From NCBI GenBank assembly GCA_965235115.1, contig OZ249437.1, forward strand, positions 13,764,001 through 13,828,000: a stretch of 64,000 nucleotides of DNA, given 5' to 3'. Numbering within the stretch: the stretch's first letter is position 1; the number at the start of each line of letters is the position of its first letter. The DNA is from Laetmonice hystrix (taxonomy: Eukaryota). The translations under genes and the position numbers were made by a program. Below are positions 6,109 to 38,300 of this stretch, piece by piece. The notes beneath the pieces are model-generated. The model was not told the DNA's origin, made no database searches, and was given only the letters and a program-made list of their open reading frames with translations.

Positions 6109-8010
6109 CTATAACTACACTGAAATCGCACTCCCGCTCCAGAGCGTAAATGCTCACTCGTATAATATAATACCCACTCAGAACAACCGAGGCTGCTTCT
6201 GATTGGCCTTTACTACTTCACCTCGGGAGGCAAACCAGGCCTTGGATGTATGAAGCCGCCTTTTTTTCCAGGATTTGCGCAAAGTCTTGTGAAGCGGTAG
6301 CCATGAATATGAGCGGTAAATAGTCGAATTTCTCCCGACGCACAGGCACATGGTTCAAATCTAATTTCTCAACATACCTATCCTTCTCGATTTTTTACCG
6401 CAAAACAATCTCTAATTTACCCACGAGTAAACCAGATATTCTGGCTCTGTAGGCCTAAATACCTATCGCTAGTCATCCGTTTCATCACCTATGTTGTCCT
6501 GGTTGATGGTGGATACACCAAACAGAGAGTGAGCTGTGCCGGAAGTACCTGGTCACTGAAATCCTCAGTCACTTCTTGTTGCTTTTGTGGGTGGGTAGGC
6601 CTATGGGTATGGGTATATAGGGGTCTGTCCAGATACCGGAAAGAGACATTAGCATAGAGCTTTCAGATTTGGAATTGCTATATATAAAGCAGTAAATGAT
6701 GGCATATTCAACCCAATTACGGCAGAGAAAAGTCTCAAGGAATGGACTACTTTTAAGTGACTTTTTTTTATTTGGTCAGTTATGATGCTGTGCTGCGTGT
6801 CAACGCAAGAAACAAAACATACAACAATACGTAAATAATGATAATCCTTCGTAAAATGCGTTTGCATTATAAAACCGGTAATAACACCACGTTTCCTCTA
6901 TTGCACACAAAATATAAACTGCACAAGAACGCGGAATATAGACACGTCCTTTGAGGACATTACATGAGTCAGCCATTATTATATTAGGCTAGTTGCTTTA
7001 AGTACACTGTTTAACAATGCAAGTCTCATGTGGAATTCCACCTCGTGATCCCATGTTACCTTCCGGCCATACGCGTAAGACAAAACATGCCGGTGTGGTT
7101 CAGTCTGGGAGGTCTCCAAAAACAATTCACATCGCGTCGCTAGGCGTCGCGATGTTAGATCATAGGAGTGGTCCTCTTAGTATAGTATAGATCTACGTCC
7201 GTTAGATGGCAGCACTTTCAGAAGGGCCTCCATCGTGGCACAGACGTTAAACAAGATGTGCGTACTATCTGGGTTTCATGAAAAGCATTGAGAGTGAGGT
7301 GTCCTTAAAGCAGTACTTGTTGGTCGTCTATTAAAGCAGGCTGAGGTTGTTTTAAAGAGGGTCACATCACATTACTTAAGACGCCAACTCGTACGTCCAC
7401 AGCTGTAGCAGGTTTTATATTTGGTTTCTCTGATCGCGTGCTACTGATCCTTTCTTTGATCCACCTTATCCAGGACCTGGCTGCTGTGAATCCTTTGCTG
7501 ATTGTTTTAAAGCGACATATCCCGGCGGGTACGTGTTTTATCACATATATAATGCGAGGTGTTCAAGCATGTCGACGCCAGCAGGGCATTAATTCCTAGG
7601 GTATTGCCATGTTGTGTCTGAGCGTTCGACTGGCTCGTCATTCGGGACCATGCTGTCCTCAATAACGTACTGGATTTTATTGTACACAACATGGTGGTCA
7701 CTGACGTCATTTCACGCACGGCTCGTACAGTCTGATGGGCTCACGCATGCGTAGATGACCATCATGTCGAGCAGTTCTCGTTACATAAATAGTATCAAGC
7801 TAAGTATAGATTAGCTTGAGTTGTGGCCAAACCGAACTCCATCGGAGGAAACTGACTCCAAGCACAGGTTCCTTGACCTAGAGTTAGTGCGCACTTACCC
7901 GCTCTACGGACAGGGAAGGTTGGGGGTTGGGGTGAGATAGGATAGGGGTAAAGGTGTTACCCCGCACGGCAGTGTCTGAAACCCTTGTCCCAGTCCCAAG
8001 TCACGTGGTA

Positions 8011-29300: not shown

Positions 29301-32300
29301 AGGATCTAATATTTCGATATGGGACTACAATAATACTCAATGCTTTTTAAGTTACATTTCTCGCTCAAGACAAACTTAATTATCATTTCAGGTGGGATTA
29401 CGATATATTCCGCATAGTCCTTACCTAAAGAATTCACAATGCTGTCTCCCTATACCACGGGGACGGGTACTAGTAACCCTCTGGTGTTGTCACACGCCTA
29501 CACACAGAATATGCTAACACATACCAGGAGGGTATAAGACTTGGGGCCCCCAGCCCCCCAGCCCCCCCCCCCCTCGCGGTGAGGAACCCAGATCAAACAT
29601 TGTCAAGGAGACCGAAGGCGTTACGCATTCCGCGACGTTCCCTCCCCGTCCATTCAGCCAGTATGGATTTGAGAGACGCTAACACGATTAGAGCGGCTTA
29701 GTGTTTAAGGAGACCGATGGCAGCGTCTGACAAGGGACGCCATGTGAAACCCAAACAGATGGCGCCCTGGAGAGAGATAAACCAACAGGCGGTCGGTCGG
29801 TACGTCCCTCCGTACGTCCGTCTGTCCGTCTCTGGGACCAGTGGTCGGCCGCGGGGCTGGGACGGTGGCAACCGGTGGGACTCGTACAGACAACTCGGCT
29901 CGGCAAACAGCGGGACTCGGCAAACAGTCGTACTCGTACAGACGACTCGGCTCAGCAAACAGTGGGACTCATCAAACACTCGGACTCGTACAGACGACTC
30001 GGCTCGGCAAACAGCGGGACTCGTACAGACGACTCGGCTCGGCAAACAGCCGGACTCATCAAACAGTCGGACTCGTACAGACGACTCGGCTCGACAAACA
30101 GCGGGACTCGGCAAACACTCGGACTCGTACAGACGACTCGGCTCGGCAAACAGTGGGACTCAGCAAACACTCGGACTCGTACAGACGACTCGGCTCGGCA
30201 AACAGTCGGACTCGTACAAACGACTCGGGTCAGAAAACGGCAGGCTGGGACTCGGTAAACTGCGGGCTGGACGGTGGGACTCGTGGGCTCAAACCGCCTG
30301 GCGTTTAAAGGAATCACATAGAGATGATGTTGAGATGGTGATGAGGATGGTAGAGGTTGGGAAGGGTCTATGTTCTGTACCATTCCAATAACTAAGATCT
30401 CTCTGTACCTAATGACCTCATCTCACACATCTCCCATATAAACTCCATATCAATCTCTGTTGTCGCATCAACCACATCTTTCCGCACATCTACCATGACT
30501 CCGTCAGTAAGCATGCCTTGTGCAGCATTATTGTCCCCCCCCCCCAAAGATGAATCATTACAGAGACCTACAATCAGCTAACTACAAAAATATCATTTAT
30601 GCAGGCAGAACTCGGACACCTTATTGTTGTTGAATGGGTGACACATATTTATTCAATATTAAAACAAAAGGATGTAAATATTCAGAAAGTGAGCCCACGC
30701 TGCACTGACTGACAGTGATATACAAGATAAGATTGAAATGTGTCACCACCCAGGGTGAGCCCTCACTGCACCATCCGGGTTAAGAAGAATGTAAAAATTG
30801 AATATGATTCAAACAGAAGAAGATATAAGTTATCTAAGGATAATATTGTGACGATAGTTTCTCCTGGACAGTGAGCCCACACTGCACTGCCTGGAAGGGT
30901 TGTTATAAGTTTGAGGAGACTGGGTGTAATAATGAACAAAGTTGTTGTAAGTGGTATAGATTCTGAATTATGTGTCTGTCAAAAAGGGGTAGTAGGTGGC
31001 GACAGTGCCACGAAGAACCGGAATACGGTAGGAGGAAGATGGGGAGGCGGCGGGATTGAAAAATTCGTGGATGTCCGACTGAAGACGTAATGGCGACGAT
31101 GAGACGCATGTGGAAGATGACCTTGACCTCAACTGTATATCACGTCACGTGTTCCCCTGGCGGAGGCAGGGGCAATTTGAGTTATCCGGAGAAATAGCGC
31201 CCACTTGCGGCTTAGATGAGAATTACCGAGTTCTCCTGCATAAAACTCGTCGAGCCTGCGGCTGCAACGTTCCTTTATGCAGGCAGAACTCGGACACCTT
31301 ATTGTTGTTGAATGGGTGACACATATTTATTCAATATTAAAACAAAAGGATGTAAATATTCAGAAAGTGAGCCCACGCTGCACTGACTGACAGTGATATA
31401 CAAGATAAGATTGAAATGTGTCACCACCCAGGGTGAGCCCTCACTGCACCATCCGGGTTAAGAAGAATGTAAAAATTGAATATGATTCAAACAGAAGAAG
31501 ATATAAGTTATCTAAGGATAATATTGTGACGATAGTTTCTCCTGGACAGTGAGCCCACACTGCACTGCCTGGAAGGGTTGTTATAAGTTTGAGGAGACTG
31601 GGTGTAATAATGAACAAAGTTGTTGTAAGTGGTATAGATTCTGAATTATGTGTCTGTCAAAAAGGGGTAGTAGGTGGCGACAGTGCCACCAACCTGCCAG
31701 TTGGCAGGTGGAGCCACCAAAAGAAAAAAGAACTGACGACTCAACAACAAAATGAGTCAAATTGACATCTTATCTGGGGTTAAGAGAACCCGAGCTGATC
31801 CACATGGAATGTCACACCAAATCCAAAGGTTGACGATTGAAGGTGCCGTATCCAGGTCTGGTTAAATGGGTTTAACTGTGAGGAGCGGGCTCTACGGAGA
31901 GTCTGTGTGTTAAAAGCCCCTGTACAACTCCAAACCATCGTCTCCCGATGACATGAAACATAAGAAGATCTGGTCAGTAAAGTATGAACTGTAAGTCATT
32001 CTCAAGGTGAGGTTGAAACTCCGATGTAGGAATTCGACGGAAGATACATTCAGATGAACTTTCCAACTACAGTCAAGGCACGCACACAAGCTAAAACCCA
32101 CTCGCTATATAAAGGAGAATAACGAAACGATGGCGAGAACCATCGGCGAGACGGGTAGTCACTGCCAACACTTGCTAAGTGAATGATAAATCGCACCCAA
32201 AGGTGCAACGTCCCAACCACACGGGGCAAGGCACGGCAGATAAATAAAGTACCACTCGCTAAGTAAAAGAAAATGGACCAAACATTGGCACAAATTCAAT

Positions 32301-35300
32301 CACATGGGGCGAGACTGACGGTACAGTGCAACTTTGCTAAGTGAATGAGAAATCGCACCCAAAAGCGAACATCCCACCACAGGGGCAAAGCACGCACACC
32401 TAACAGTGCAACACTTGCTAAGTGAATGAGAAACCGCACCCAAAGGTGCAACGTCCCCACCACACGGTGCAAGGCACGCACACAGAATAACGTGCAACCT
32501 TGAATAAATGAATTTGAGGAAATATAAGTAATGGAATAATCACCACATGGGCAAAGCACGAACACCTAACAGCGGAACACTTGCTAAGTAAATGAGAAAC
32601 AGCACCCAAAGGAGCAACGTCCCCACCACACGGTGCAAGGCACGCACACAGAATAACGTGCAACCTTGAATAAGTAAATCTGAGGAAATATAAGTAATGG
32701 AATAATGACCATCATATACGTCAATAGTACCTCAGATGGATCAAAATGTAAAAAAATGGGAAGGCAGGGGGATAATAACCTGTATCATGGCCCAGAATAA
32801 TATTAGGTATACGTAATAATCGATTATTACGATAGAAATATAATTGTCCAAGAATTGAAATACCTGATGAGCCAAAATATAAAACTGTGGTTCCAGAAGA
32901 ACAATACGTACCATGATGTCCAATAATAGAGAAGTAAAGATATAAGAAAACCAATAATAATGACACAATCCCGTGATCCAATCACTAAAGCAGTAGCCTT
33001 AATGAGATGATTCAACATAAAAAACCTGTGAACCCATCAGGACTATAATATATTATGATGGGTAAATATAGATAAGTAAATATATTACAATAATAATAAT
33101 AACGACAGAATATCACTTGTCCAACCACTGTACCAGTGGACCAATAACCTATAACCTAACCAATAACCTATCATGATGTCCCAGTATAGGGAAGTAAAGA
33201 TAGGAGAATAATAATAATAATGGCACGGATCCATTGATCCAACCAAAACCCATCAGGACCATAACACATTATAATGGGTAAATATAGAAAAGTAATATAT
33301 TATAATAATCAATAATCATGATAGAAATATGACTTGTCCACCCCGTACCAGTGAACCAGTAGTATAAGATGGATAAACTATAAAACTGTGTTTCAATGAA
33401 CAATACCATATCATGATGTCCCAGTATACGAAAGTAAAGCTATAAGAAGATAATAACAATGGCACGGATCCATTGATCCAACCAAAACACCAGGACTATA
33501 ACACATTATGGCACGGATCCATTGATCCAACCAAAACATCAGGACCATAACAGATTATGGCACGGATCCATTGATCCAACCAAAACACCAGGACTATAAC
33601 ACATTATGGCACGGATCCATTGATGCAACCAAAAACCAGGACTATAACACATTATGGCACGGATCCATTGATCCAACCAAAACACCAGGACTATAACACA
33701 TTATGGCACGGATCCATTGATCCAACCAAAACATCAGGACTATAACACATTATGGCACGGATCCATTGATCCAACCAAAACATCAGGACTATAACACATT
33801 ATGGCACGGATCCATTGATCCAACCGAAACATCGGGACTATAACACATTATGGCACGGATCCATTGATCCAACCAAAACATCGGGACTATAACACATTAT
33901 GGCACGGATCCATTGATCCAACCGAAACATCGGGACTATAACACATTATGGCACGGATCCATTGATCCAACCGAAACATCGGGACTATAACACATTATGG
34001 CACGGATCCATTGATCCAACCAAAACCCATCAGGCCCATAACACATTATAATGGGTAACTATAGAAAAGTAAATATATTATAATACTCAATAATCATGAT
34101 AGAAATATAACTTCTCCACCCAGTACCAGTGAACCAGTACTATAAGATGGATAAAATATAAAACTGTGTTTCAAGGAACAATAACATATCATGATGTCCC
34201 AGTATAGGAAAGTAAAGATAAGAAAATAATAATAATGGCACGGATCCATTGATCCAACCACTAAACCAGTCTCTCATGTGATGACATGATTCCGCATAGA
34301 AAACTGGGAACCGATCAGGACCATAACACATTATGATGGGTAAATATAGAAAAGTAAATATATTATTATAATAATCAATAATAACGATAGAGATATCACT
34401 TGTCCAAGGAGTACCAGTGAACCATTACCATAAGATGAGTCAAAATATAAAAAGAAAAGTAAAGATATAAGAATAATAATAACGGCACGGATCCATTGAT
34501 CCAACCACTAAACCAGTCCCTCAGGTGAGACAAAATATAGTCAGATTAAAAGTGTAACCCGATCGTATCCTAACAACTTATAATGGTTACAAACGTAAAT
34601 ATATAAATAATAATTATAAATTCAACTGATCCAACCATTAAAGATCAGTCAGTACAGATGAGTTATGAAAAACTGTGAAATGTCGAGTTGTCCGCTAGAC
34701 AACCTATATAATATAGAATCATGGTTGTCTGCAGGAATTTCTGCCAATTCTGGTTGACCCGCACTGTACCAATGCCTGGAACATCCTTTTGCTCTTCTTC
34801 TTCTTCTTCCTACGCTCCTGTTCCTGGTTTGTTTGTGTGGAATTGGGACTACCCAGTGAACAGGAGACGATTATGTCACCTATCATCCACTCGTAGAGAG
34901 TCGAACAATCAGGCGGTCGGCCTGCTGTTCCAGAGCCAAATTTGAGGTTATCAAATGGACAACCGTGCCATAAAGGCAGGGTTGTAACTTGTACGACCTC
35001 GCTTTATGTTGTCTCGTACAACCGTACAACCACTTACTTGAATGGTAAAAGGTATTAAATATATTATAATAAACAGAATAATGTATGAATCCACCGGTCC
35101 CAGACCGAACCAGGGCAATCAAATTAAGTAGAAGAAATGAAAACCATTAAACAACAAGATTAGATCTGGGGATATAAAGAATAATAATACTCCATGGTGA
35201 TGATAAAATTTGACTGGTCCTAGACCGAACCATTAGATAAAACAGGGCAAAGCTACATTAATGAGGAGTTAATAAAGATGAATGCCAGAGCTGAACATTT

Positions 35301-38300
35301 ATTTACACTGGACAGACTGAGGGAACTAAGGTAGATGATCATGATATATTGTGACTGTAATATAACGTATAATTATAACGTCTAGAAGGAGATACCGAAT
35401 TAAATAATATAGTATGGTATAGTAAGTAGATGTATACCGGTACCATAATGATATTATAGAGTATAAGGAGGGATTCAAGCCCCTGTACCTGTGCTTAAAC
35501 GAAAGAATGGTAGGGCTAGAATGGAATCATTGTAAATATTAATATAACAGAGAGACGTCGTTGGAGAACGTACTACTTGGATCAGATTATATATCCTATA
35601 TTATATTAAGGTATAATATAATGTAACTATGACATTTCAATTCAAATAAGCGGCAGGCTAACGTGACTAGGGCTACTACAGCTCCTATAACTAAGTTATA
35701 GGTACCAGGACGACAGAGTGAAAAGTAGTTTTATTAGAGACAATTGAAAACTAACGTTAGGCCTAACACTGTAGATAGAGTGTTGTAACACTAACGTCGT
35801 TAGTTAGGCTACGTTATAATATAAATTATGAGGTTAGGCTATCGTGAATCAATAATTATAGCCTAAATTAGGTCACAAGCAACCTAATGATGCCGAATTT
35901 AACAGTAGGGCTAGGCCTTTTAATGAGACCCTATCCTACTTAACTTATCGTCGACGAGACATCTTCCCCTTGAGGCTTGACATGCGGGCGACTCCCAGTC
36001 GGGACGCAGACGCGCACGTGTCCAAATTCAAGGACGACGGGCTGCCCTACAAAACTCTTGAGACGGAATAGGCTACAGGCCCGGCCTGGGTCGTCAAGCG
36101 GGGGGAATGGGATCCCGATCGTCACGAAACCATGGTATCAAACGGCAAAAGAACACGTCCAGCAAAACCAGTGATAAACGTCCCATGACGTAGCCAACAC
36201 GACAAGGAAGGCGCAAGGCAGAATCAACGCTGCATGCCAAATTGAAAAATTCGTGGATGTCCGACTGAAGACGTAATGGCGACGATGAGACGCATGTGGA
36301 AGATGACCTTGACCTCAACTGTATATCACGTCACGTGTTCCCCTGGCGGAGGCAGGGGCAATTTGAGTTATCCGGAGAAATAGCGCCCACTTGCGGCTTA
36401 GATGAGAATTACCGAGTTCTCCTGCATAAAACTCGTCGAGCCTGCGGCTGCAACGTTCCTTAAACCAAGTCATTTCCTAATATATAATACACGTACCATA
36501 AAGATTAATAACTGATTTAAAAGGCTGATAAGGATTTTTGTCCCCTTTATGATGCGAATGAACGCTTGAAAAAGGACATAAATCTTCACGGAATAATACG
36601 TGCGCGCCAGAGAAAAACACAGATTCATTACCTGAGTAAATGGAAAGGTATAATACCACTGTAACAGTCTCCAGCATAGTGGCAACCGGCATCATCAGGA
36701 ACGGAATAGTTTCAAGCAAGCATATAATATAAAGAAACCAGGGCAAGGAAAGTTTTCTCTGATGCACAACCGACTATATATCGCCTAGCAAAAATAGGTG
36801 CACGGTTATATATGGTGATTTTCTATTTTTGATAATAAGATTCTGGGGGTTATCTGTCTATGTGTATTATCAAAGACCGTCTAAAGTAGATTAGACGGTC
36901 TTTGGTATTATGTACAGCACAGAGTCAAAGCCGTGAAATACTATAATACATTTAGCATAATGCCTTCGGTTTGATATGTGAATATCATACAGGAGATGAC
37001 GATGAGACAAAGTAAAAGCAACTATAATGTATGTTTCATTCGGCATTGTCACAGCGCCGGCTTCGTTAGCTGCTTTTTCACAGGTCCATTTTCTCGGATT
37101 GTGCAAATAATTGCTGCTTCTCCCTCCCGGCCCCACTTTAGCACGACAGAAAATCGTAATTAGTGCTTCCCTGCGTCTCAGCACTCAGTTGTCGCTCGCC
37201 GTTACGCCTCTCCATAATGTAATTAGTATTAATTTCTATCACTGAGTTTTGGACGCTAGAAAAGCAAATGAATAATTTCACAATTAAATCGGGATTTATT
37301 CGTCTTTGTAATGTTTTTCATGTTGACTGTGCAGACGTTGAGGGCCCATCCAGAGGTATAGCTTCCGGCGGTTTTACGTTGACGGAACGTACAGCGCCAC
37401 CTAGTAGAACGCTGGCCAACCTGGGGACTTATCATCCTCTTGCAGTGCCTTCTAATCTAACATATCGAATTAAAACACTGTCGCGCTTTGTTGGACTAAA
37501 TTGGAGTAATTCTTTTAGCGAAAGCGAAATGGCGTAGCCCTAGGCTTCAGTCATTACCTCAGTCCTGACTTTTCCAATGTGTGTGATTATCTAGTGCCTA
37601 CGACATACAACGATTTAAAATCAAATGAAGGTGAAAACTAGCGGAGCAAGACATTGAGGTTGGGGATGAAGATGGTGGGACAGATAGGTAGATCACTAGA
37701 TCACCAGATCACATCGAATCATGGATGTAACTTATACCAAAGAGATCCTTCTAGCTCGTTGCTTATAAATACTGATGCTGCATTTACTACATGCACATCA
37801 AAGTATGGCCGCCAGAGTGCGTTCATGCTATGGACTCTACTTGACTCTAATAATGATACGAGAGTTTTAAAGGGGGTCTACAGTAAACAGTATAAAATCC
37901 CTTGACGTGTGTACACTGACTGAAGTTGATGCTGGTCGTCTGGGCCCCAACAACTTCCAGATCAACCAAATCACCGGTGTTCCCTTGGGCAGTGCAATCG
38001 TGTTGAACAAATATATCCCCTGACGAACACCTTGGTTCACAACACAGCGCCCTACCTTCCACTTGAGGCAAACTTGATTCAGCGAAACTGGTCATTATTT
38101 TTCCTGTGACACGGCCGGAAATTGCGCAGTAACTCATGGCCCGGCGCCGAGGTTGTAGAAGAACGGGGAGGATGGTGGCATTTTCCCTGCAGAACTCTCT
38201 GTGGATATATTAGTTGTTGCAATCTATGCGAAAACGGGGCGGAATATATGGTTTAATTTGTTAAAAACTGCACACGTCAGCGAGAAGTCAAGCGATGGCC

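What the first reader, a model, noticed from the sequence alone, without database searches (positions are those of the whole stretch)
30596..36461. X-Y-X...Y element with asymmetric inverted repeats and TT boundaries: rolling-circle tandem or split-direct-repeat retroelement with no coding capacity
Seen in the sequence: X (416 bp) + 43-bp unique spacer + Y (221 bp), then X again, ~4.55 kb of repeat-rich non-coding DNA, and Y again. Both pairs are identical by eye. The internal junction is CGTTCC-TT-TATGC and the inferred empty site is TATCA-TT-AAACC. The first 20 nt of X are the inverse of a 19-mer ending 31 nt inside the Y end, followed by small hairpins (CTCGTCGAG). Established: a terminal 5' inverted repeat, a subterminal 3' inverted repeat with hairpin, TT insertion and internal satellites describe Helitron2/Helentron non-autonomous elements; an A1...B1-A2-B2 layout describes Ngaro/PAT tyrosine-recombinase retroelements. 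Inference: this is either a head-to-tail dimer of a 0.68-kb and a 5.2-kb Helentron-like unit, or a non-autonomous SDR retroelement read on the minus strand. The unique 43-bp spacer fits the second model; the asymmetric IR fits the first. It looks recent and sits 170 bp from a candidate receptor exon.
Basis: partly seen in the sequence, partly recalled or inferred. Interest (0 to 1): 0.75.

Follow-up and report, generated by a model that had tools for sequence, protein, structure and literature searches.

The report
Gene-less Ngaro-type jumping element copy
This is a very young, protein-less copy of a tyrosine-recombinase (Ngaro-type) retrotransposon read on the minus strand; it must borrow its enzymes from an intact relative elsewhere in the genome, and it is a well-documented example of a known kind, not a rolling-circle element.

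Summary

It is not a chance tandem or an assembly artefact. Twenty loci with unrelated flanks carry the same X-spacer-Y-X-internal-Y order, and none of 22 tested has the permuted order.

One diverged relative on contig C29 has the same layout, with repeats 78-81% identical. On the minus strand it encodes an SGNH/GDSL hydrolase, a gag-like zinc-finger protein, RT-RNase H and a tyrosine recombinase with an intact R/HxxR/W/Y set. This is the Ngaro layout A1-[ORFs]-B1-A2-B2.

Empty sites show insertion at TT(T) with no target duplication. They come from satellite monomers and from a contig joint across this locus in the sample's own runs.

The "asymmetric inverted repeat" is a hairpin that forms only across the B1|A2 junction. 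It is kept, with compensatory changes, in other Ngaro families of this genome.

No Rep/helicase lies between these ends, so the Helentron reading fails.

Non-autonomous relatives of this kind are already known (TOC1, SIRE). The scan had already met gene-less Ngaro-type elements several times on other DNA of this genome. Interest is modest.

The parts
36241..36461 (-). The last two bases, TT, are the crossover dinucleotide.
   Evidence: 221/221 identical to 31055-31275. Homologous to the repeat upstream of the ORFs in the coding relative L031.
31690..36240 (-). Non-coding internal region that replaces the ORFs. It occurs only in copies of this family.
   Evidence: No ORF over 89 aa and no tblastn relic of the relative's proteins. 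Genome hits for 34600-35940 and for the 49-bp array fall only in family copies.
32166..32711 (-). 84/166-bp tandem array. Apart from the repeats themselves and about 30 nt beside X2, this is the only internal stretch with homology to the coding relative.
   Evidence: TRF. 71-77% identical to L031 6155-6402, which lies between the hydrolase and gag-like ORFs.
33459..34049 (-). 49-bp x 12 tandem array, specific to this family.
   Evidence: TRF score 1045, 96% matches. The genome search finds it only inside family copies.
31274..31689 (-).
   Evidence: 416/416 identical to 30596-31011.
31055..31275 (-).
31012..31054 (-). 43-bp unique spacer between A2 and B2. It is conserved in all copies and in the coding relative.
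   Evidence: SIRE of VIPER has a comparable ~30-bp exclusive stretch between A2 and B2 (PMC6681497).
30596..31011 (-). The first two bases, TT, are the crossover dinucleotide.
31226..31295 (-). Hairpin across the B1|A2 junction. The two inverted arms flank a ~33-nt inner part with a small stem-loop, and the crossover TT lies at the base of one arm.
   Evidence: Sense-strand fold -42.9 kcal/mol, z -7.7. The same fold occurs in 3 other families, with 6 of 28 pairs changed on both sides. About 60 nt are nearly invariant against the coding relative.
30648..30653 (-). AATAAA on the sense strand, about 50 nt before the end of B2; repeated in B1 at 31326-31331. Inferred polyadenylation signal.
   Evidence: These columns are invariant between the window family and L031. 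No RNA data, so this is inference only.

Best explanation
The element is a non-autonomous member of a Ngaro-type tyrosine-recombinase (YR) retrotransposon family. Its sense strand is the window's minus strand, with the layout A1 (221) - non-coding internal (4,551) - B1 (416) - A2 (221) - 43-bp spacer - B2 (416).

Shown: the layout is inherited as a unit at 20 loci. A relative with homologous A and B repeats, spacer and junction encodes SGNH hydrolase, gag-like protein, RT-RNase H and YR on that strand. Insertion is at TT(T) with no gain or loss of target bases. The copy is very young and probably still heterozygous.

Inferred: the element is transcribed from A1 to a poly(A) site in B2. It is reverse-transcribed by RT supplied in trans; the intact single-copy relative on C29 is the best candidate donor. 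The B1|A2 junction serves as the internal copy of the joined ends. The YR then recombines the B|A joint of the cDNA with a genomic TT(T) site. [quoted passage not shown]

Recombination between the two Y copies gives solo X-spacer-Y. Recombination between the two X copies gives X-internal-Y.
For: - Exact repeats and layout.
- Same order at 20 loci with unrelated flanks, with 20 Y|X junctions genome-wide against a control of 0.
- 0 of 22 internal-Y ends are followed by X.
- Coding relative L031 has X1, spacer, Y1, X2 ... Y2 at 78-81% identity.
- Its minus-strand ORFs hit GDSL lipase (5.6e-9) and RVT_1 (6.6e-13), with weaker RNase H and Phage_int_SAM_1 matches.
- The YR carries the motifs FFRMGEL / GHSFRIGAA / GRW / FRKYIR, and the hydrolase carries GDSH / GGND / DGVH.
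- The nearest protein-atlas clusters are eukaryotic Phage_integrase proteins (score 0.97).
- TT precedes the element at 30 of 31 5' ends and ends it at 23 of 25 3' ends; the next target base is T in 21 of 23.
- Empty satellite monomers read ...AAACC-TTTA-CGGC..., while filled ones carry CCTTTA at both ends and the element's own junction is CC-TTTA-TGC.
- An empty-allele joint exists at this locus.
- The junction hairpin is conserved with compensatory changes.
- Literature: the SDR definition and hydrolase ORF of Ngaro (PMC9210276, PMC4157794); junction bases defining integration, so that they flank both ends (PMC7192593); isolated AB repeats arising by recombination (PMC8547959).
Against: - No RNA data exist for this organism in the runs offered, so the transcript, its strand and its ends are unproven.
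- The candidate helper's repeats are only about 80% identical to this family's, so trans-mobilisation by that copy is plausible but not shown.
- RT placement in the Ngaro clade was not tested with reference sequences.
- If the cDNA circle holds two identical B|A joints, it is unexplained why only one is ever used (0 of 22 permuted).
- The empty-allele joint has only 28 letters on its shorter side.
Confidence: 0.9

Rival explanations
1. Head-to-tail dimer of two Helentron/Helitron2-type non-autonomous rolling-circle units (0.68 kb and 5.2 kb) that share ends. It would arise by read-through of the first 3' end and then be propagated as a dimer.
For: TT boundaries without target duplication. A 5' terminal and 3' subterminal inverted repeat followed by small hairpins. 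Single units X-spacer-Y (6 loci) and X-internal-Y (4 loci) exist on their own. The genome holds 125 Helitron_like_N matches, many with very long open frames.
Against: The only coding element with these ends encodes RT-RNase H and a tyrosine recombinase on the opposite strand. No Helitron_like_N match lies between an X and a Y, except one 42-kb case where family-internal sequence flanks foreign DNA on both sides, i.e. a nested insertion. The order is invariant: no X-int-Y-X-sp-Y, no homodimers, no trimers in 20+22 ends. Single units are the expected products of recombination between the direct repeats. The inverted arms are kept in other RT/YR families of this genome.
Confidence: 0.02
2. The family is of Ngaro descent but now moves as DNA, without reverse transcription. 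Recombination between A1 and A2 releases a circle A-internal-B with a complete B|A joint, and the recombinase re-inserts it at TT(T), as a Crypton would.
For: Four X-internal-Y copies sit at distinct sites with precise ends. This is what such a circle would give. Solo X-spacer-Y copies are what it would leave behind.
Against: This route cannot produce the complete A1...B1-A2-spacer-B2 form, which is the majority: 20 junction-bearing copies among about 32 insertion loci, the latter estimated from 52 Y ends. The copies are spread over many chromosomes at 94-100% identity. The window copy is complete and young.
Confidence: 0.06
3. Assembly artefact, or a local tandem duplication of one element's ends.
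For: Only short contigs (unitigs) of the same sample were available, so no single read was seen to span X-spacer-Y-X at this locus.
Against: The same arrangement occurs at 20 loci with unrelated flanks, and in a relative that is about 20% diverged.
Confidence: 0.01

Closest known systems
Ngaro retrotransposons (Goodwin & Poulter 2004; e.g. DIRS-53_XT of Xenopus, Cafeteria Ngaros)
   Same: Split direct repeats A1-[internal]-B1A2B2. Family members encode gag-like protein, RT-RNase H and YR, with no methyltransferase and an extra SGNH hydrolase ORF. No target duplication. Isolated AB repeats are scattered in the genome (PMC9210276, PMC4157794, PMC8547959).
   Different: The window copy has no ORF at all. 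A 43-bp unique stretch separates A2 from B2. In the coding relative the hydrolase ORF comes first, before the gag-like ORF, whereas in amphibian Ngaros it follows the YR (PMC9210276).
TOC1 of Chlamydomonas reinhardtii
   Same: An active non-autonomous retroelement of the DIRS order (bioRxiv 10.1101/2022.06.16.496473, citing Day et al. 1988).
   Different: TOC1 is from a green alga. I recall, but did not check, that its coding partners are of the PAT/DIRS group and carry a methyltransferase. There is no sequence relation.
SIRE / VIPER of Trypanosoma cruzi
   Same: SIRE equals the A2-B2 part of VIPER with about 30 bp of exclusive sequence between them (PMC6681497). This has the same anatomy as the solo X-spacer-Y copies here.
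   Different: SIRE is a short unit only. The family here mostly keeps the complete A1...B1A2B2 form with a 4.5-kb non-coding interior.
Helentron / Helitron2 non-autonomous elements (HINE)
   Same: TT boundaries, no target duplication, a 5' terminal and 3' subterminal inverted repeat with a hairpin, and internal tandem repeats.
   Different: No Rep/helicase relative. The coding relative has RT and YR on the other strand. The two-unit order is invariant. The inverted arms form one hairpin across the joined ends.

Membership tests
Ngaro (YR retrotransposons with split direct repeats) | Split direct repeats: A1 at the 5' end and B1-A2-B2 at the 3' end, with A1=A2 and B1=B2. | tested here: met
   On the minus strand: 221/221 and 416/416 identical, with B1 directly abutting A2. 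The same holds at 20 loci. A 43-bp spacer between A2 and B2 is an addition.
Ngaro (YR retrotransposons with split direct repeats) | Encodes RT-RNase H and a tyrosine recombinase. For a non-autonomous member, a coding relative must share its repeats. | tested here: met
   The window copy has none. Relative L031 has homologous repeats and encodes RVT_1 6.6e-13 with weak RNase H matches, plus a YR with R/HxxR/W/Y motifs.
Ngaro (YR retrotransposons with split direct repeats) | No methyltransferase domain. This separates Ngaro from DIRS1-like and PAT-like elements. | tested here: met
   Pfam finds no methyltransferase in any of the four ORFs. The RT-RNase H ORF (616 aa) overlaps the YR ORF, which leaves no room for one.
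Ngaro (YR retrotransposons with split direct repeats) | Optional SGNH hydrolase ORF, reported only for Ngaro among YR retroelements. | tested here: met
   Lipase_GDSL_2 5.6e-9, with GDSH, GGND and DGVH motifs. Its position, before the gag-like ORF, differs from the one described.
Ngaro (YR retrotransposons with split direct repeats) | Insertion without target duplication. A few bases at the joined ends are also present at the target and so flank both ends. | tested here: met
   Empty and filled satellite monomers, the flanks of about 30 copies and the empty-allele joint.
Ngaro (YR retrotransposons with split direct repeats) | RT and YR group with reference Ngaro sequences in a tree. | not testable with these tools
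   No named reference Ngaro sequences could be fetched. The RT's relatives are unnamed proteins of cnidarians, molluscs and hemichordates.
Helentron / Helitron2 | Autonomous relatives between the same ends encode Rep and helicase. | tested here: not met
   125 Helitron_like_N matches in the genome. None lies between X and Y except inside one nested 42-kb case. The coding relative has RT and YR.
Helentron / Helitron2 | Insertion between T and T without target duplication. | tested here: met
   This does not discriminate, because YR insertion at TT(T) looks the same.
Helentron / Helitron2 | Units are independent, so tandem forms should vary in order and number. | tested here: not met
   Only X-sp-Y-X-int-Y occurs among two-unit forms. 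0 of 22 are permuted, and there are no homodimers.
DIRS1-like | Inverted terminal repeats plus an internal complementary region. | tested here: not met
   The repeats are direct. Only 17-19-nt inverted arms flank the junction.

The most novel reading that the evidence does not exclude
A roughly 60-nt hairpin that exists only where the element's two ends are joined may be the actual site, as DNA or RNA, that the family's enzymes recognise. It is nearly invariant between this gene-less family and the single intact coding relative. It is also kept, with compensatory changes, across other Ngaro families of this genome. If it is the recognised site, one single-copy master whose repeats are 20% diverged could drive about 30 gene-less copies. 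It might also explain why only the newly made B2|A1 joint, and never the identical internal B1|A2 joint, is used for insertion (0 of 22). Such a control element and such directionality are, as far as I could find, not described for Ngaro.
Probability: 0.3. Interest if true: 0.55.

Novelty: new member of a known kind. Interest (0 to 1): 0.3.

Why it matters
The finding settles an ambiguous anatomy. TT ends, an asymmetric inverted repeat and internal satellites can mimic a Helentron, yet this element is a tyrosine-recombinase retroelement. That matters for repeat annotation in invertebrate genomes that hold both kinds.

It also gives a clean natural system for studying how YR retrotransposons insert, which remains poorly understood:
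- about 20 complete gene-less copies;
- their recombination products;
- one intact candidate helper;
- many empty and filled target sites;
- a probably still segregating insertion.

As a kind of element it is not new.

Tried and rejected
- **Helentron dimer:** rejected (see rivals).
- **Coding relics in the window copy:** tblastn of the four L031 proteins against the element gave only chance-level hits, E >= 0.13.
- **A closer coding partner:** the genome search with the L031 RT found that copy alone at 100% and the next at 59-60% amino-acid identity. The helper is therefore single-copy, as far as the scored candidates show.
- **The element as a seed of a genome-wide satellite:** the 49-bp array and the unique internal part occur only inside family copies.
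- **Neighbouring 'receptor exon':** no Pfam match for the adjacent ORFs.
- **Expression:** no RNA run was offered for this organism.
- **Long-read check of X-Y-X at this locus:** only short contigs of one sample were available.
- **Junctions of more Ngaro families, for a larger covariation test:** The hairpin test therefore rests on four families.
- **NCBIfam scan of the ORFs:** added nothing.
Full report
**Observation.**
- X is 30596-31011 and 31274-31689, 416/416 identical.
- The unique spacer is 31012-31054 (43 bp).
- Y is 31055-31275 and 36241-36461, 221/221 identical.
- The interior is 31690-36240 (4,551 bp).

The interior holds an 84/166-bp array, a 49-bp x 12 array and many dispersed short repeats. 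Its longest ORF is 89 aa. The junction reads ...CGTTCC-TT-TATGC..., and the flanks read ...TATCA-TT and TT-AAACC....

**It is a family, and the order is inherited.**
A search of the window's own genome (627 Mb, 35 contigs) with X-spacer-Y found 25 full- or near-full-length matches at 94-100% identity, and one more at 85%, on many contigs.
- Mapping the parts on 26 loci gave 20 with X-spacer-Y-X-internal and 6 with X-spacer-Y alone.
- An exact pattern for the Y|X junction occurs 20 times genome-wide (control 0), and the Y end occurs 52 times.
- That suggests roughly 32 insertion loci, 20 of them complete.
- All 22 internal-Y ends examined are terminal, so the permuted order X-internal-Y-X-spacer-Y never occurs.
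- Four X-internal-Y units lack the upstream X-spacer-Y.
- Complete elements are 5.5-7.0 kb long. A few are longer because they hold nested insertions (coordinates).

This excludes an assembly artefact and a one-off tandem insertion.

**The coding relative.**
One diverged copy on C29 (locus L031) has the same layout: X1 1001-1426, spacer, Y1 1469-1681, X2 1680-2106 and Y2 7595-7784. Its repeats are 78-81% identical to the window's. Between X2 and Y2, on the minus strand, lie four open frames:
- a 202-aa SGNH/GDSL hydrolase (PF13472 5.6e-9; GDSH, GGND and DGVH motifs);
- a 362-aa protein with a Cys/His-rich C-terminus and no Pfam match, which I read as gag-like;
- a 616-aa RT-RNase H (RVT_1 6.6e-13, with weaker RNase H matches);
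- a 308-aa tyrosine recombinase.

The recombinase has only a weak Pfam match (Phage_int_SAM_1, 4e-4). However, it shows the catalytic set directly: FFRMGEL, GHSFRIGAA, GRW and FRKYIR. Its nearest clusters in the protein atlas are eukaryotic Phage_integrase proteins, score 0.97. There is no methyltransferase and no room for one.

Read on the minus strand this is A1-[ORFs]-B1-A2-B2. That is the structure defining Ngaro, and an SGNH hydrolase ORF is known from some Ngaros (PMC9210276, PMC4157794, PMC7192593).

In L031 the two X copies are identical over 423 nt and the two Y copies over 215 nt, so it is young and looks intact. A genome search with its RT finds this copy alone at 100% and the next at 59-60% amino-acid identity. 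The coding relative is therefore single-copy, while the gene-less family has about 30 loci. RT relatives elsewhere are unnamed proteins of cnidarians, molluscs and a hemichordate, the best at 64%.

**What the window copy keeps.**
Homology to L031 is confined to three stretches:
- X-spacer-Y-X plus about 30 nt;
- the 84/166-bp repeat region, which in L031 lies between the hydrolase and gag-like ORFs;
- Y2.

There is no coding relic. The rest of the interior, and the 49-bp array, occur only in family copies. The spacer is conserved in L031 too. SIRE of Trypanosoma cruzi has the same anatomy: A2, about 30 bp of exclusive sequence, then B2 of VIPER (PMC6681497).

**Insertion.**
- TT precedes TATGCAGG at 30 of 31 5' ends in unrelated flanks.
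- TT ends the element at 23 of 25 distinct 3' ends.
- The next target base is T in 21 of 23.

Four copies lie at the same position of an ~833-bp satellite on four contigs. The many empty monomers read ...AAACC-TTTA-CGGC.... Filled ones read ...AAACC-TTTA-TGCAGG...GTTCC-TTTA-CGGC.... The element's own internal junction is GTTCC-TTTA-TGCAGG.

Nothing is duplicated or lost, and the target shares 2-7 bases with the junction. This matches what is proposed for YR retroelements: a few bases at the joined ends are also present at the target and so flank both ends after insertion (PMC7192593; TTT ends in Xenopus DIRS-like elements, PMC9210276).

At the window's own locus, contigs of two runs from the only available sample join 30595 to 36460, skipping the element exactly (depths 42.6 and 37.5). 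I read this as an empty allele in the same individual or sample. Two cautions apply. The shorter side is only 28 letters, and the sample is probably the one that was assembled.

**The 'asymmetric inverted repeat'.**
On the sense (minus) strand, the end of B and a stretch 33 nt into A are inverted arms. They are therefore adjacent only at B1|A2, or in joined ends.
- The 90 nt around the junction fold at -42.9 kcal/mol (z -7.7).
- The same two-storey hairpin forms in L031 and in two other RT/YR families of this genome whose 3' regions I fetched.
- In a five-row alignment covering those four families, 6 of 28 pairs change on both sides and stay paired.
- About 60 nt around the junction are nearly invariant between the gene-less family and L031, while the neighbouring parts of Y diverge.
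- A loose pattern for arm-gap-arm matches 83 sites against 1 for the control, with at least four junction types.

So the feature that suggested a Helentron is a conserved junction element of these Ngaros. This agrees with earlier notes of the scan (s1-306524, s1-333042), which I tested only on these four families.

**Mechanism, and what remains inferred.**
I infer transcription of the minus strand from A1 to a poly(A) site after the conserved AATAAA in B2 (30648-30653). I infer reverse transcription by enzymes supplied in trans, restoration or joining of the ends using B1|A2, and YR recombination of the B|A joint with a TT(T) target.

Solo X-spacer-Y and X-internal-Y copies are the expected products of recombination between the two Y copies or the two X copies. 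Isolated AB repeats are reported for Cafeteria Ngaros (PMC8547959).

Three things are not shown:
- the RNA, because no RNA run was available;
- the helper's identity;
- why the internal B1|A2 joint is never used for insertion although it is identical to the outer joint.

**Rivals.**
- **Helentron.** The genome has 125 Helitron_like_N matches, but none lies between an X and a Y. The one exception is a 42-kb case on C21 where family-internal sequence flanks foreign DNA on both sides, i.e. a nested insertion. The invariant order and the RT/YR relative also argue against it.
- **DNA-only mobilisation of single-unit circles.** This could explain the four X-internal-Y copies, but not the 20 complete ones.

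**Comparison and novelty.**
Active non-autonomous YR retroelements are known: TOC1 (bioRxiv 10.1101/2022.06.16.496473) and SIRE (PMC6681497). I found no paper describing a gene-less Ngaro family in an animal, but the kind is not new. The scan had already reported gene-less Ngaro-type elements on other pieces of this genome (s1-323315, s1-333029, s1-356004). One of those notes could not name a helper. Here a coding relative with homologous repeats is identified.

Noticed in passing
L064-L075 (G000:C6:7202338-7281197); also the flanks of L005 (C10), L006 (C7) and L076 (C21): A satellite with a monomer of about 833 bp forms an array of over 70 kb on C6 (2,585 first-look candidates). Copies of the Ngaro-type family sit at the same monomer position (AAACC-TTTA-CGGC) on four different contigs. 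The flanking monomers differ by several substitutions, while the elements are 99-100% alike. This suggests repeated insertion into a preferred site and not one spread event.
   Followed up: partly
L031:6804-7412 (minus strand): In the coding relative the SGNH/GDSL hydrolase ORF is the first ORF, between A1 and the gag-like ORF. In amphibian Ngaros it is described as following the recombinase (PMC9210276).
   Followed up: no
window 30685-30708, 30755-30773, 30865-30888 (and the same in X2); L080 1009-1201: A motif of about 18 nt, GTGAGCCCAC(A/G)CTGCAC, occurs three times in X (= repeat B). It recurs, also repeated, in repeat B of a different Ngaro family whose RT is only 59% identical. It may be a shared cis element.
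   Followed up: no
G000, whole genome: 125 Helitron_like_N matches. Most are inside uninterrupted frames of 2,000-3,600 codons, so large Helentron/Helitron-type elements are numerous and look intact in this genome.
   Followed up: no
window 29867-30238: A 52-bp (also 87/104/139-bp) tandem array lies about 360 bp upstream of the insertion. The long ORFs through it (up to 224 aa, both strands) have no Pfam match and look like repeat artefacts.
   Followed up: partly
G000:C21:3187013-3229086 and G000:C3:6097725-6115766: Two family copies are split by about 38 kb and about 11.5 kb of foreign DNA. The C21 case includes a Helitron_like_N match at 3210755-3211348. These look like nested insertions into the element's interior.
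   Followed up: no
L031:4591-4865 (minus strand): The gag-like ORF and the RT ORF overlap by about 275 nt in different frames. This is compatible with a frameshift or another coupling between them.
   Followed up: no
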